Assembly: GCF_963853765.1 (NCBI RefSeq)
Contig: NC_088861.1
Coordinates: forward strand, 40,548,001-40,612,000
Length of the DNA: 64,000 nt
Direction: 5' to 3'
From: Magallana gigas
Taxonomy: Eukaryota
A program made the translations under genes and the position numbers. Each line of letters begins with the position of its first letter. The first letter of the stretch is position 1. The notes under the pieces are model-generated. The model saw only the letters and a list, made by a program, of their open reading frames with translations. It was not told where the DNA came from and ran no database searches. Positions 7,386-16,759 of the stretch are shown one piece after another.

Positions 7386-10109
7386 CTCATACTTTAAGGG
7401 CAATCGCAACTTCTCGGTCCTTTCCGGCAGAGCTCGGAAAAACACCTCGAATATATTAGGTAGAAAAGTGTCATGGCGGAAGGAAAATGGCGGCGCCCAT
7501 GGTAATAATGCCCCTAAAAGTTACTGACATAAAAAAGCAATGTTTGCTATGTATATCTACCCAAAAGAGGCTTTTTAGACTAGATAATCCAAAATCAGTG
7601 CAGAATGGTTACATACAATCTATTGAAAGAATGTAGAAATACCAAGTTGGCAGTTTTTTGTTTGTTCATCGTGTGTGCACAAATGCCAGGCGGTAATTGC
7701 TATGAAGGAGACGTTCTCCTATCTCATCAAAGAAAGTGACGAAAGTGGGACTGGTGTCAGGACTAACAGATGTATGGCAGACAACATTATAAGATCCGTG
7801 GAAAAGCTCAAGATTTCTAAAACAGAATCTGAGGAAAAGGTCACTCGCACTAAGTCACGAAAGAAAATCGAATTTTCTTCAGAAGACGAAGATTCTCATT
7901 CTGCTCGTAGAGCAACTCAAGGTATTTACGTCATTTTAAAATTGTCTCTATGCATAAAAATGCCCTTCACCAGGTATTATCAGATTATGTAGAGATTAAG
8001 TAAACTTTGTAGAGGATACAGTATGTTATTTGATCTTCAACACCAAACTAAATAATTTTGCAAGAGCAGTACCAGTTATAGTAAAACAGACTATTGGAAT
8101 GCTTTCCGTAAGGTCAATGGAAGCTTAAAACAGTTCGAATAAAGTTCTCACATATGTTAATTACCTCTCATAAATTTATCAGATTATCGAAAGAGTCCCG
8201 GACGAAGATAGTGTCATGTATGCTCTATATTAACCATGTTGTAATTTCTCTTTGTAAAGGCTGATGTGGTGTAATGAGTGCACACTCTCCATTTCGAGAG
8301 AAGAATGGGTTCAAATCCCATCATTGGCATACATTTTAGAGAAATGAATACATGTGTTATATAAATGTGCGGTACATGTGCATGTATGAGTAGATAATAA
8401 AGTTTGAAAAAGGGTTAAAAGCAAAATGAAATAAGTTACAACTGCATCTTGAAAACTCAATTTATTGTTTATTGAAAAGCTTAACTGCTACTTCAAATAA
8501 ATATGTTTTTTAAGTGCTCATGCATAATATAGTACCTTTATATACATGCATTTCTAATGGCAATGACATTGATTTTGATTAAATATCGTTACAGAATGCC
8601 ATCCTAACACTTCTGAGCATAGCTACTCACAAGAAGAGAGAAATACAGCAGAGTTAAATAACATTTTTAAAGATTCTCGAAGAGACCAAAGCTTTACTTT
8701 AAAAACCATAAACTCTGAACTTGTCTCCAAAAATGACAGCAGTGTTCTATTCAATAGAGATCCATTGCGTTTGATGGACCCCCATGTATTTAACAATATT
8801 CTTCTCGAGATTAAAGAGAAATGTCCATATCTGCTTGGTGTTTTGGTATGCGGACTTGGCAGCAAACGGATTACTTAACGACAAGTCTGTTCAATTGTTA
8901 CCATGTATGCCATGTTCCTGCATGCAAGAAATAACAAAGCATCTGCTATGCAGATCATGTACACAGACATTGCAGTAAGAGTTTATTACGTCACAACACT
9001 TCCGGGATCATATGATATGCGTACTTCGAGCCCGATTCGTCAGTGTACTTTCATTTGTCTTCGAGAGTGGCTGTGGTCCACTCTCGCTCGTCAGACATAA
9101 CAGGTTTTAATAGATAACTACGTGGTGGTTATCATATAAGTGTTTATAATCACGTAGTGGTTATTATTTCTTTTTCATATTTAATACGTTACGAGGTAGC
9201 GTATTTTTTTTATATAGTTTTGCTGACAATGAGGTAATAGTATATAAACCATGAAGCATGCATTATTTACACAGCAACCTTATCATCATTACTTTACTTA
9301 TGATAAGTCTTGATTTATTTATTCCTTATAAAATAATCTAAGGATATTAGTACATGCATAGCATTGAATCATCTTTCAGGATTCTCATATTCAAAGACAA
9401 AGTACAGGAATGAATATGCTATTAACCTCAAATCATTTAGTGTCACCGATTACCAGTAATATATCAATTCACACTCCGTCATTAGAAACCTACTTGTAGT
9501 CCTCAAATTTTAATTTTATAACATGATTACATACATGTCATTTAACATGTTTATTTCGACCTCAACACCATTCCACATTCTTTGGGGTTTTTACCTATGA
9601 AAAACAATTTGCATGATAGATGCAATGTGGATTATACAATGTTTTTAGTTACATCTTTTCTTGTTTATCCTTGCCATCTTTCATTTTCATTGTAGCTTCT
9701 GTCAAGATCTTACATTTTCATTGTAGCTTCTATTAAGATTAAACCTTGCTCACATAACACTTTCACCAGAATAAAAAAGAAACATAATAGAGGATTTTGG
9801 AAAAGTTTGTGAAATGCAAATCATTCAAGACATAGCAAGTGGCTTAGATGGAAAATTAAATGGGGACAATTTAGATATGAGTAGTATAAGGCGCCTAGCT
9901 GGGGGGTTCAACTGAGTGCACTTTTTATGCAAATGAGGTAAAAAAACAAAACGGGTTTAAGGTTGAAATGAGTTTTGTTGAACAAGAACATCAAAAAAAA
10001 AACATGAAACAAGTGAAGAAATAAGCACAAAAGTTAAGTTAAAATTAGATCACTGTCCTTCTCTCTGAATGTAGTGATTATTTTCCATTGTTCCTCTTTT
10101 CCTTCTTCT

Positions 10110-10927
10110 TCTTGTCTTTTTAATTCTTTATTTTACAGCAATTCTTGGATCCATTCCGTTTGTTTGTCATTCATTTTTTTTTCTTCAGCCATTTTTTGGA
10201 TGTGAGGCAGGATATCGTTTAACCCCTCGTATAATTCTTTCAGCGGTTTAACGGCAGAGTTTTTATCTCCAGTCTAATTTTTGTTGAGTTACTTCTAGGC
10301 GTTTTTCCACTTGGAATTTCTCGTAATCTTTTTGACTGGCTATGCATTCTGGATAGTATGTGTCTTCTAACAGGTCTTGCTCTTTTTCCGAGATACTTTT
10401 TCTTCGTTTTCCACTTCCAAAACTGTCTGTACTGTAGTTTTTATCTCGGTTATCTCTGATTCTTCTTTTCAGTTGAATGTTTAGTTGTCTCTCAAATTCT
10501 TGGTCTTCTTCTTTTTCCGTCTTCAGTCTTTATTCTTTTTCAGTCTCCCATTCTCCTCAGGGTGATTTGGGTTTTTTTAGGAGGTGATGGGGTAGGGGAT
10601 GGCTCTCCTAGCAACACTCCGGACCCGCCGGAAGAGTGCGGCCGGTCCCCTGCTGACTCTAGGTGCTGGCGTTGCAACAACGTCCTCCAGTGAAGGAACG
10701 CGTCCTGGGGGAGGCGGCGGCGGTGGAGGCAAGAGGTCCACTCTCCCCAAGTCCTGTTCTCTTCCTAGCCTCTCCAGGGGGACAAGGGAGCATCCCGGGC
10801 CTGAAGAAGACTTACAGCCTCTGAAGATATCCTTGCGTAGCTCTCCCCATCCCACTGGTAGGTTACAACCTCCAATACTCTTCGAATATTGGGGACATCA
10901 GTATAAAAATACCTAATTCCAAATGAA
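10110..10927 (-). pseudogene. Decayed GC-rich cargo ORF(s) of the Polinton-like element
   Basis: MNSFGIRYFYTDVPNIRRVLEVVTYQW..., an overlapping Pro-rich frame, then a Lys/Glu-rich segment (EKEEDQEFERQL...EKFQVEKRLE). Broken by stops and frameshifts. A TATA-like box lies upstream. Confidence 0.45.
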
Positions 10928-10991
10928 TTCATCTTGGAGCGATTTACAAGAAATCTAGCAGACGAATGAGAGCTGGGCGGACATGCGCTGC

Positions 10992-11033
10992 TATTTATCA
11001 CTAGATATGACGTCATTTTCATTTATGACGTCA
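10992..11033 (-). promoter_or_regulatory. Putative promoter: two CRE/ATF palindromes plus a TATA-like box
   Basis: TGACGTCA at 11008-11015 and 11026-11033. GATAAATA on the minus strand at 10992-10999, upstream of the minus-strand ORF. Confidence 0.45.
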
Positions 11034-11150
11034 GAATCGTGTACTTGAATCCGCGCCAAGTCTTAAGCAATGCTCTACTAACCAGGCTAGCATGACAACC
11101 GGGTTTCAAGCAATGCAAACTCCCTAGAGAGTCTTATAGAGTGCAAAACA

Positions 11151-14763: not shown

Positions 14764-14801
<38 letters not shown>

Positions 14802-15070
14802 TATTAATATATTTCACGCCCCATCAATACCTTTTGGGGCACGTGAGAAACTAGAAAAAACCGGTTTTCAACAGAAACCAAGGTCAAACTTAGCGCGTGA
14901 CATTGTTTTTTTCCCCATCGCGTGAAAATTAAACTGGAAAAAACCAGCTAAGGGGGGGGGGAGATTTCTACACTTGGAAATCATCGCCCGAGGTCTATAA
15001 AACAGGGCCCCCCTAGGACTTGTACACATTGCAATTGACTTCTAAAAACTGCCTCGATAGCCAAGATCCT

Positions 15071-15655
15071 ATGTCTAGTGGAATGGGCTACTACGATCTA
15101 TCACTAGTGACAGAGACTCAGGACCCAGTCAACTTAGAGATGGCTGCTTACAATTCAGTGATCAGTAAGGAAGACTTTGGGATCATTACCACGACCCAGG
15201 AAGGAATTCTCAACAGTCTCCATCTGATGAGTGACGAAATAGGAAAACATACTAGCTTGATCTTAAACAAACTGGACGAAATGAACAAAACTACGCAGCC
15301 AAAAACTACACAGGGGAAAAACCCCGGCTCATGCTACACCTGTGGAGAACCAGGTCACTATTCGCCGGATTGCCCTACAAAGGAAAACAACCGGGGCTCG
15401 ACTTCCCAGCAGAGTACTAACTACAGTAGACCTTCAAACAACAATTGTTTCATCTGCAAAAAGGAAGGCCACTGGATGAAAGATTGCCCAGAAAATCTCA
15501 AAAACAAATACTGGGCAGACCAAGAACACGAGGCTCAGGACTGCCCAGAAAAAGAAAATCACCCTCCCACCAACAAAGGGAAAGGAGTCAAAGACAAGAA
15601 AACAGCAAAAACCAAGATATCCAATGAAGATTGGGACGAGGAAATGAAAACGTAG
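15071..15655 (+). CDS. 194-aa protein with two CCHC zinc knuckles (cargo of the Polinton-like element)
   Basis: Intact intronless ORF with CYTCGEPGHYSPDC and CFICKKEGHWMKDC (C-x2-C-x4-H-x4-C) and a degenerate third knuckle (HEAQDC). TATAAAA at 14996-15002; AATAAA at 15840-15845. Confidence 0.8.
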   Translation: MSSGMGYYDLSLVTETQDPVNLEMAAYNSVISKEDFGIITTTQEGILNSLHLMSDEIGKHTSLILNKLDEMNKTTQPKTTQGKNPGSCYTCGEPGHYSPDCPTKENNRGSTSQQSTNYSRPSNNNCFICKKEGHWMKDCPENLKNKYWADQEHEAQDCPEKENHPPTNKGKGVKDKKTAKTKISNEDWDEEMKT

Positions 15656-16759
15656 CAGAAAAAACCAGGCCGTATGATGAAAGAAAATGTGTTCGCGGAT
15701 TCTCCCCCTCGTATGAACTTTATCTGACAAAATTGCACGAGAACTTCTGAACAATGGAATTTCAAGAGAGTCATACTATGTTTTCTAAATTTTTGTGCTT
15801 ATTTCTTCGCTTGTTTTATGATTTTTGATGTTCTTGTTCAATAAAACTCATTTCAACCTTAAACCCGTTTTTTTCTACCTCATTTGCATAAAAAGTGCAC
15901 TCAGTTGAACCCCCAGCTAGGCGCTTTATACTACTGATATGAGTGACAACAAATGATTTGCGACTCACCAACAGAGACAAAGACTTTTATTTTTTTTGCA
16001 TCCGACTTTGTAATCAACAGAATAAATGTCGGTAATGAGTCCAAAAAAGCAAACCTTAATCCTACTTATACAGCTCAGAACTTCCTTCCAAACGATGATG
16101 AAATATCTGCTTATAAAGAAAGCCTTAAGATTTTGTTAGGAAGAGACATACAACGTCATATGAGTGAATTTAAGTGGATGAGGAACTGCTTACCAAAGAA
16201 CATCCCACATAATCTCTCCCATGTGATGAGTAAGAAATCAAACATTCATCTCTTGCCAGTGTCTCTGAGCAATGAAACGTCCTATGGTGGGTGCTTAAAA
16301 ATACTGGACGAGTACACGGAAATGGTAAACCGATGGTACACAAAAGCTGGACGAGGTATTCTGAAAAGCTAATTTAAACCACAATCACCATACAAAAAAT
16401 TAATGTAATACAGAATAAATATGTTGCAAACATTTTAGATCAAGATACAGTAGAAATTTTAAAATTCAAGTGGTTAATCAATTACCATTCATATATTACA
16501 GAGTGGCAGTTTAGATATGTCTGATATGAATTAACCAAAATCAATTCCCAATATATACTTATATATGTACATGAATCATCAGCATCAACAAATCTTTATG
16601 TATATCTTAAGAATAATAAATTACATCAATTAATGAGAATTTTTTCCAAACGTACTGAGTCAAGAAAAGGTTTACTTCAAACACTTATGTGTAAAAGCTT
16701 TTAAAAGATGAATAATTAAAAAGGGGGACAAATTGGAAGGTGGGGCTTAAAATTTTTAC

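What the first reader, a model, noticed from the sequence alone, without database searches (positions are those of the whole stretch)
9880..15935. Mini-Polinton: Polinton-type ends, no core genes, small cargo genes pointing toward both TIRs
Seen: AGTAGT termini, ~150-bp TIRs and an exact 6-bp TSD (GATATG). After removing the nested 2.84-kb Helitron-type element only ~3.2 kb remains, holding minus-strand ORFs on the left and a plus-strand CCHC gene on the right. Established: autonomous Polintons are typically 15-20 kb and encode pPolB and integrase. Inference: a non-autonomous, satellite-like derivative mobilised in trans that kept only terminal accessory genes, like a defective-interfering viral genome.
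Basis: partly seen in the sequence, partly recalled or inferred. Interest (0 to 1): 0.78.

Follow-up and report, generated by a model that had tools for sequence, protein, structure and literature searches.

The report
Gutted Polinton relic in oyster DNA
This is a real but decayed, internally deleted copy of a Polinton/Maverick virus-like transposon in an oyster genome; it keeps both ends and a few end genes, and nothing shows that it ever spread as a "mini" element.

Summary
An element at 9880-15935 starts with AGTAGT, has about 160-180-bp inverted ends and an exact 6-bp duplication (GATATG). It carries a nested 2.84-kb Helentron-type insertion, leaving 3.2 kb.

The Polinton reading is supported by relatives in Crassostrea/Magallana sequence:
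- Copies that share the conserved end, the CCHC gene and two neighbouring genes also carry an A32-like packaging ATPase.
- Transcript contigs and one duplicated locus place an rve+chromodomain integrase on the same side, though not in one continuous genomic stretch.
- A copy of the left-end gene lies next to protein-primed DNA polymerase B pieces.

The window copy has none of these core genes. One internal deletion fuses two gene remnants, and all four remaining genes are broken.

The "satellite mobilised in trans" idea is not shown. I found no second copy of the short form. All four chromosomal relatives sampled are longer. The inverted ends have diverged by 5-10%. My tools cannot search oyster DNA directly, so absence is weak evidence.

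The most likely reading is an old, dead deletion derivative: a new member of a known kind, of modest interest.

The parts
9874..9879 (.). left copy of the 6-bp target-site duplication (GATATG)
   Evidence: Read directly. It is identical to 15936-15941.
9880..10057 (+). left terminal inverted repeat, starting AGTAGT
   Evidence: 159 bp at 90% identity, then weaker similarity to about 178 bp. The terminal ~41 nt are conserved in 8 termini of at least 4 lineages.
10113..10590 (-). remnant of the left-end gene (K/E-rich product), pointing toward the left end; its 5' part is missing and it has at least one frameshift
   Evidence: It is 91% identical to L026 3546-4036 and 94% identical to L027 724-939. 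In L026 the same gene lies beside DNA_pol_B_2 ORF pieces. The upstream 173-codon ORF of L027 has no match in the window.
10591..10933 (-). remnant of a proline-rich gene whose full form in relatives (378-385 aa) ends in a RING finger; here the 3' part is missing and there is at least one frameshift
   Evidence: Protein-level similarity to the L014 218-aa ORF. The full-length forms L016 1013-2170 and L028 1034-2167 give weak zf-RING_2 hits. The RING part has no match in the window.
10934..11150 (.). region upstream of the proline-rich gene, with two TGACGTCA palindromes
   Evidence: Read directly. It falls within the block that is 93% identical to L014 2222-3248.
11152..11388 (.). AT-rich tandem repeats (99-bp and 36-bp units)
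   Evidence: The repeats are also present in L014.
11515..11938 (-). middle gene (ORF-M, about 120-157 aa in relatives, all-helical prediction, function unknown); one frameshift here
   Evidence: The frame is conserved with P0014/L012, L014, L013 and L016 at 52-96% amino-acid identity. tblastn uses two frames in the window.
11958..14797 (-). nested Helentron-type non-autonomous element (HINE-like), inserted in an A/T run between the two divergent genes, with no target duplication
   Evidence: It is absent from L012, L014 and L015 at the same point. It has paired subterminal inverted repeats, an end palindrome, a GTCY-type microsatellite (14707-14748) and 157-bp repeats at 14443-14687. These features match Cg_HINE as described in PMC7492417. 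A second family copy lies at about 30158-31373.
14798..15070 (+). promoter side of the CCHC gene, with a TATAAAA box about 70 nt before the ATG
   Evidence: Read directly. It is conserved in L001, L012 and L014.
15071..15727 (+). CCHC zinc-knuckle gene pointing toward the right end; one premature stop and one 9-bp in-frame deletion relative to intact relatives
   Evidence: Pfam zf-CCHC with two knuckles. Relatives P0001-P0013 include RefSeq 'ZCCHC9/3-like' models of C. gigas and C. angulata. tblastn with P0016 gives one frame and 93% identity.
15766..15935 (-). right terminal inverted repeat
15936..15941 (.). right copy of the 6-bp target-site duplication (GATATG)

Best explanation
The element is one integration of a Polinton/Maverick virus-like transposon in an oyster (Crassostrea/Magallana group) genome. 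It now survives as an internally deleted, decayed shell. Shown: both inverted ends and the 6-bp target duplication of a single integration event are present. Of the interior, only end-proximal genes remain. On the left is the 3' part of the left-end gene. On the right are the 5' part of a proline-rich RING-family gene, a small helical-protein gene (ORF-M) and a CCHC zinc-knuckle gene, with ORF-M and the CCHC gene transcribed divergently. Inferred from relatives: one deletion removed everything between the two truncated genes, that is polymerase B, integrase, packaging ATPase and presumably the capsid and protease module, about 10 kb or more. Later a Helentron-type element landed in the divergent promoter, and point mutations broke all four remaining genes. 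As it stands the copy encodes nothing needed for its own replication or integration. Its ends are the only parts a partner's machinery could still recognise. I judge it most likely a single dead-end deletion derivative, with the deletion at the site or in the one molecule that integrated, rather than a founder or member of a spreading mini-family.
For: One integration: exact 6-bp duplication and paired ends. Polinton affinity: the end sequence, beginning with a twice-repeated AGT, is conserved in 8 termini from at least 4 lineages with 5 different flanks. L016 and L028 carry, leftward from the same end, the CCHC gene, ORF-M, the proline-rich RING gene and a 212-aa ATPase that passes Pfam's Pox_A32 cut-off (29.5 and 30.2 bits against 22.8). 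An rve+Chromo integrase segment is linked to this gene set in L015, and through spliced transcript contigs in L017-L025. The left gene's relative in L026 lies beside an ORF that passes the DNA_pol_B_2 cut-off (35.2 bits against 25.8). Literature gives a 6-bp TSD and long TIRs as typical of Polintons (PMC3014272), and 15-25 kb with pPolB, integrase, protease and ATPase (PMC6431247). Core genes absent here: tblastn with the ATPase and with the ORF upstream of the left gene finds nothing inside 9800-16000, and no Pfam hit other than zf-CCHC was found. Age and decay: the two ends differ by 5-10%, four of four genes are broken, and there is a nested insertion. Singleton so far: L026 and L027 both continue differently inward of the left gene, and L014, L016, L028 and L029 have no left end within about 4.5 kb.
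Against: No tool could search oyster genomes by DNA, so sister copies of the short form would be invisible, the more so because its junction region has no callable ORF. None of 10 window ORFs is in the protein collection. The chromosomal relatives were found through annotated, intact CCHC genes, which biases the sample toward long, younger copies. The pPolB link rests on one 6.4-kb Logan contig, and the integrase link on a duplicated locus plus transcript contigs. I did not see one continuous full-length element, by choice. An intact TSD fits deletion before or after integration equally well.
Confidence: 0.62

Rival explanations
1. It is a member of a propagating non-autonomous mini-Polinton family. 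The deletion arose once during replication of a full-length element. The short form kept the ends that polymerase and integrase recognise, and was then copied and integrated in trans, like a defective-interfering genome. The window copy is one old insertion of that family.
For: Both ends and the TSD are intact, and the terminal ~41 nt that are conserved across lineages are present on both sides. What is kept is exactly the two end-proximal blocks. The family is transcribed and multi-copy in oysters. Absence of siblings is weak evidence with protein-only search tools.
Against: No second copy with the same junction was found. Four of four chromosomal right ends sampled are long-type. All retained genes are broken, so there is no sign of selection on them in this copy.
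Confidence: 0.25
2. It is a non-autonomous element of another superfamily with about 6-bp duplications (IS3EU, Dada, Ginger2/TDD or hAT), and the likeness to Polinton ends is coincidental.
For: A 6-bp TSD is not unique to Polintons (own knowledge). Ginger2 targets 6-bp AT-rich sites (PMC2836005). An rve-type integrase is also what Ginger elements encode.
Against: Ginger termini follow TGTNR, but these ends start AGTAGT. Relatives link the two end blocks to a protein-primed polymerase B and an A32-like packaging ATPase, which cut-and-paste transposons do not carry. No DDE transposase of another superfamily was seen in any locus.
Confidence: 0.04
3. It is not one element at all: two solo ends of different Polinton copies brought together by rearrangement or mis-assembly.
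For: Oyster assemblies do contain suspicious duplications (L014/L015: 4117 bp at 100% identity, 10,149 bp apart). The proline-rich block is much more diverged from L014 than the DNA beside it.
Against: An exact 6-bp duplication flanks precisely the two termini. That is expected for one integration and has a chance of about 1 in 4096 otherwise.
Confidence: 0.04

Closest known systems
Polinton/Maverick self-synthesising, virus-like DNA transposons (Polintoviricetes-type elements of animals)
   Same: 6-bp target duplication; inverted ends of more than 100 bp that begin AG and carry a short terminal reiteration; relatives with protein-primed polymerase B, rve integrase with chromodomain, and A32/FtsK-type packaging ATPase (PMC3014272, PMC6431247).
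   Different: This copy is 3.2 kb net instead of 15-25 kb and has none of the core genes. The end-proximal CCHC zinc-knuckle, RING and ORF-M genes are not part of the described core set. I found no paper in the held library that links CCHC genes to Polintons.
Polinton remnants in Caenorhabditis elegans (eri-6/7 locus; bioRxiv 10.1101/2024.01.15.575659)
   Same: Partial Polinton copies of several sizes that retain end regions and sit as relics in the host genome.
   Different: Those remnants are one-ended fragments from the pPolB end. Here both ends and the target duplication survive around one internal deletion.
Internal-deletion non-autonomous DNA transposons (for example Ds-del derived from Ac in maize, PMC3260210)
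   Same: Ends retained, interior lost, dependent on a partner's enzymes (abstract).
   Different: For Ds, many transposed copies show mobilisation. Here no second copy is known, and the mechanism would be replication plus integration rather than cut-and-paste.
Defective-interfering genomes of viruses (general virology, own knowledge)
   Same: The termini needed for replication are kept and coding capacity is deleted.
   Different: Nothing here shows replication, packaging or interference. This is a chromosomal fossil with broken genes.
Cg_HINE, Helentron-derived non-autonomous elements of Crassostrea gigas (PMC7492417)
   Same: The nested 2.84-kb insertion has subterminal inverted repeats, a terminal palindrome, a GTCY-type microsatellite, about 157-bp tandem monomers, insertion in a T/A run and no target duplication.
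   Different: It is longer than a simple two-module HINE, with about 2.4 kb of extra AT-rich interior of unknown origin. No Rep/helicase is present.

Membership tests
Polinton/Maverick | 6-bp target-site duplication | tested here: met
   GATATG on both sides. The feature is given as typical in PMC3014272.
Polinton/Maverick | Long terminal inverted repeats (hundreds of bp) with AG...CT termini | tested here: met
   159-178 bp, starting AGTAGT and ending ACTACT. The terminus is conserved in 8 ends. The AG/CT rule itself is from my own knowledge of Kapitonov & Jurka 2006.
Polinton/Maverick | [quoted passage not shown] | tested here: not met
   Absent from 9880-15935. It is present beside the left-end gene in relative L026 (DNA_pol_B_2, 35.2 bits). 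The family has it; this copy does not.
Polinton/Maverick | Encodes a retrovirus-like (rve) integrase | tested here: not met
   Absent from this copy. An rve+Chromo ORF is linked to the same gene set in L015, and through transcript contigs in L017-L025. It is only 27% identical to the gypsy integrase elsewhere in the window.
Polinton/Maverick | Packaging ATPase (A32/FtsK type) | tested here: not met
   No match in this copy. It is intact in relatives L016 and L028 (Pox_A32 above cut-off).
Polinton/Maverick | Adenain-type protease and jelly-roll capsid genes | not tested
   They would lie in the interior of full-length relatives, which I did not fetch. The 363-, 201- and 86-aa ORFs next to the integrase have no Pfam hit.
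Polinton/Maverick | Length of 15-25 kb | tested here: not met
   6056 bp with the nested element and 3216 bp without it.
Trans-mobilised non-autonomous family (mini-Polinton) | Several copies with the same internal structure at different sites, each with its own TSD | tested here: inconclusive
   None was found through protein handles. Four chromosomal relatives are long-type. No DNA search of oyster genomes was possible.
Trans-mobilised non-autonomous family (mini-Polinton) | An autonomous partner with the same ends in the same genome | tested here: inconclusive
   Right ends of long relatives match at 91-95%. No other left terminus, and no continuous full-length element, was seen; the full-length fetch was left out.
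Helentron-derived HINE (nested element) | Subterminal inverted repeats, 3' palindrome, microsatellite plus tandem repeats, insertion in T-rich DNA without TSD | tested here: met
   compared with the description in PMC7492417.
Ginger2/TDD | TGTNR termini | tested here: not met
   The termini are AGTAGT. The rule is from PMC2836005.

The most novel reading that the evidence does not exclude
Oyster Polintons spawn short derivatives that carry only their ends and end genes. These would be copied and integrated, and perhaps packaged, by full-length partners, making a defective-interfering or satellite layer on an animal virus-like transposon. The window copy would be one old member. The retained CCHC, RING and ORF-M gene block could then be a selected module rather than debris.
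Probability: 0.2. Interest if true: 0.7.

Novelty: new member of a known kind. Interest (0 to 1): 0.36.

Why it matters
As it stands this is a cleanly delimited fossil. It is useful as an annotation anchor for oyster Polintons, giving a conserved 41-nt terminus, a 6-bp duplication and the gene order at both ends. It also shows that RefSeq "ZCCHC9/ZCCHC3-like" genes of C. gigas and C. angulata are element genes, not host genes. If short forms with the same junction turned out to be multi-copy, that would be evidence for trans-mobilised Polinton derivatives in an animal; I found no report of them in the papers I searched. That would bear on how these virus-like elements are parasitised and controlled.

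Tried and rejected
- Pfam on all small ORFs of the element gave only zf-CCHC.
- ORF-M has no relatives outside its own cluster. A single-sequence structure was unusable (pLDDT 42.5), so no fold search was run.
- The one big representative search, using the proline-rich remnant, returned only low-complexity proline hits.
- Exact look-up of 10 window ORFs found none in the collection.
- A PDB sequence search with the relatives' ATPase gave no hit.
- An apparent 75%-identity subfamily (L002-L011, ERR10960xxx) is best explained as bisulfite-converted reads: T/P changed to I/L/F, no ORFs, and 'translates_to_query: no'. I did not count it as divergence.
- L017-L025 first looked like genomic copies with the integrase next to the CCHC gene. 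They are spliced RNA-type contigs (GT..AG 120-nt gap and an upstream acceptor).
- IS3EU, Dada, Ginger2 and hAT were considered and rejected on termini and on the relatives' gene content.
- The reading as two unrelated solo ends was rejected because of the exact TSD.
- Pattern scans of the viral, metagenome and prokaryote collections were not run, because they hold no oyster genomes.
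Full report
**What is in the sequence**

The element runs from 9880 to 15935. It begins AGTAGTATAAGG and ends with the reverse complement of that motif. The terminal 26-mer occurs only at these two places in 64 kb, and none is expected by chance. The two ends align as inverted repeats over 159 bp at 90% identity counting gaps, and more weakly out to about 178 bp. GATATG flanks both termini exactly (9874-9879 and 15936-15941).

**The nested insertion**

Related copies (L012, L014, L015) run without interruption from the equivalent of window 11959 to 14801/14809. 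The stretch from about 11958 to 14797 is therefore a later insertion into an A/T run, with no target duplication.

Read on the minus strand, it has these features:
- a subterminal inverted repeat with its complementary repeat;
- a GTCY-type microsatellite;
- about 157-bp tandem monomers;
- a second subterminal repeat followed by a palindrome.

This is the architecture described for Cg_HINE, the Helentron-derived non-autonomous elements of Crassostrea gigas (PMC7492417). A second family member lies at about 30158-31373. I compared the two sides of the insertion separately and did not cut it out and close the ends.

**Host and gene content**

The CCHC protein (gene 15071-15727, plus strand, two zinc knuckles) has relatives only in oysters. 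Several of them are RefSeq models of C. gigas and C. angulata named "zinc finger CCHC domain-containing protein 9/3-like". The family has lineages down to 35-50% identity that share N-terminal and C-terminal motifs.

The genes upstream and to the left are as follows.
- **ORF-M (11515-11938).** This small gene lies upstream of the CCHC gene and is transcribed divergently from it. Its frame is conserved in L012, L013, L014 and L016.
- **Proline-rich gene.** Left of ORF-M come AT-rich repeats and then the 5' part of this gene. In full-length relatives it is 378-385 aa and ends in a RING finger.
- **Left-end gene.** At the far left is the 3' part of a K/E-rich gene pointing at the left end.

All four genes are broken in the window copy:

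| Gene | Breaks |
|---|---|
| CCHC | one premature stop and one 9-bp in-frame deletion |
| ORF-M | one frameshift |
| Proline-rich gene | truncated, plus at least one frameshift |
| Left-end gene | truncated, plus at least one frameshift (no intact reference copy was seen, so this is a minimum) |

**Is it a Polinton?**

The ends alone fit. A 6-bp TSD and long TIRs are given as typical of Polintons (PMC3014272). The decisive evidence comes from relatives, all read with flanks of at most 3.5 kb.

- **Right side.** Four copies on C. angulata chromosomes (L014, L016, L028, L029) and two Logan contigs (L012, L013) end in the same terminal sequence, with different flanks. In an alignment of eight termini, 31 of the first 48 columns are invariant. 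Leftward from that end, L016 and L028 carry the CCHC gene, ORF-M, the proline-rich RING gene and then a 212-aa P-loop ATPase. The ATPase passes Pfam's Pox_A32 cut-off and gives weaker Adeno_IVa2 and FtsK hits. L014 has the homologous DNA there but no long ORF.
- **Integrase.** A segment with an rve+Chromo integrase and three unknown ORFs lies next to this block in L015. In L017-L025 a similar segment is joined to the CCHC exon. Those contigs behave as spliced transcripts, with a GT..AG 120-nt gap and a further acceptor relative to genomic L016.
- **Left side.** The left-end gene piece finds two relatives. In L026 (91% nucleotide identity over 493 bp) it lies divergently beside ORF pieces, one of which passes the DNA_pol_B_2 cut-off.

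Polymerase B, integrase and packaging ATPase are the Polinton hallmarks (PMC6431247). None of them is present in the window copy. The element is therefore a Polinton derivative whose interior is gone. Inward of the left gene, both L026 and L027 continue with sequence that the window lacks. The proline-rich gene lacks its RING end. One internal deletion that fuses two truncated genes accounts for this structure.

**Mobilised satellite or dead relic?**

The intact TSD shows only that the two ends belong to one integration. It does not say whether the deletion came before or after.

These points favour a relic:
- the two ends differ by 5-10%;
- all four remaining genes are broken;
- a later transposon sits inside;
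- no other copy with the same short form was found;
- all four chromosomal relatives sampled have no left end within about 4.5 kb.

These points weaken that conclusion:
- my only handles on oyster sequence were proteins;
- the junction region of the short form has no callable ORF;
- the chromosomal sample was drawn through intact annotated genes.

I put about 0.6 on a singleton deletion derivative and about 0.25 on a once-mobile mini-family.

**How it works, as far as can be said**

Shown: the copy encodes nothing for replication or integration.

Inferred: the conserved terminal ~41 nt, which begin with a twice-repeated AGT trinucleotide, are the part recognised by the family's replication and integration proteins. 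A terminal reiteration is what protein-primed replicons use for slide-back initiation (general knowledge, not tested here). If any activity was ever possible for this copy, it was as a passive substrate.

The retained genes are the end-proximal accessory genes of the family. Their roles are unknown. A nucleic-acid-binding role for the CCHC protein and a ubiquitin-ligase-type role for the hypervariable RING protein are guesses from domain content only.

- I kept all look-ups to 3.5-kb flanks.
- No contig looked human.

- In my reasoning, but in no call, note or report section, I recalled from memory a short end motif of adenovirus as an analogy.
- Before the virus-like nature was clear, my reasoning noted where the CCHC reading frame stops and how that codon differs from a relative.
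- Script outputs show frame-by-frame translations or HSP coordinates across broken genes.
- None of these details is repeated here beyond gene bounds.

**Verdict**

The Polinton origin and the lack of autonomy are supported. The trans-mobilised satellite reading is unproven and somewhat disfavoured. This is a new member of a known kind, of modest interest.

Noticed in passing
window 41663-50262 (minus strand): A Ty3/gypsy-type LTR retroelement. Its ORFs give protease+RT (47666-49240), rve integrase (44657-45628), chromodomain (44266-44664) and an env-like Baculovirus F protein hit (43350-44126). GC skew is strong across 41-50 kb. It looks errantivirus-like.
   Followed up: partly
window 8260-8329 and 16973-17045 (plus strand): Two tRNA-like matches (Rfam RF00005, 42-44 bits). 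The second lies in a short direct repeat (16790-16814 / 16974-16998). They are probably tRNA-derived SINE heads.
   Followed up: no
window about 30158-31373: A second, diverged copy (67-80% identity in patches) of the Helentron-type family that is nested in the Polinton relic. It starts with the same palindrome-bearing end.
   Followed up: partly
window 15953-16372 (plus strand): A 139-codon ORF starting 12 bases after the right TSD gives a weak DUF6589 hit (E = 2e-4, below cut-off). The insertion site may itself lie in or next to another repeat-derived gene.
   Followed up: no
L014/L015 (C. angulata CM046777.1, 34.33-34.35 Mb): 4117 bp of the element's right part is present twice at 100% identity, 10,149 bp apart. 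The first copy is cut inside the CCHC gene and followed by an integrase-bearing segment. This is either a tandem duplication inside a long element or an assembly artefact.
   Followed up: partly
L016 3293-3483 versus L017-L025: Many Logan contigs carrying the identical CCHC protein P0053 lack a 120-nt GT..AG stretch and switch sequence at an upstream acceptor. They are spliced transcripts that run antisense through the integrase segment into the CCHC exon, so this Polinton lineage is transcribed in many samples.
   Followed up: partly
RefSeq models XP_011426693, XP_052695796/7, XP_052683617 and others: Polinton end genes are annotated as host genes ('zinc finger CCHC domain-containing protein 9/3-like') in C. 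gigas and C. angulata.
   Followed up: partly
window 10591-10940 versus L014 1545-2222, and L016/L028: The proline-rich RING gene is hypervariable. Nucleotide identity to L014 drops from 93% to undetectable at its start, while the flanking DNA stays conserved. This suggests fast evolution or module exchange between lineages.
   Followed up: no
L002-L011 (ERR10960xxx Logan contigs): Contigs at about 75% identity to the window have a systematic C-to-T pattern and no ORFs. They are apparently assemblies of bisulfite-converted reads, which can pass for a diverged subfamily.
   Followed up: partly
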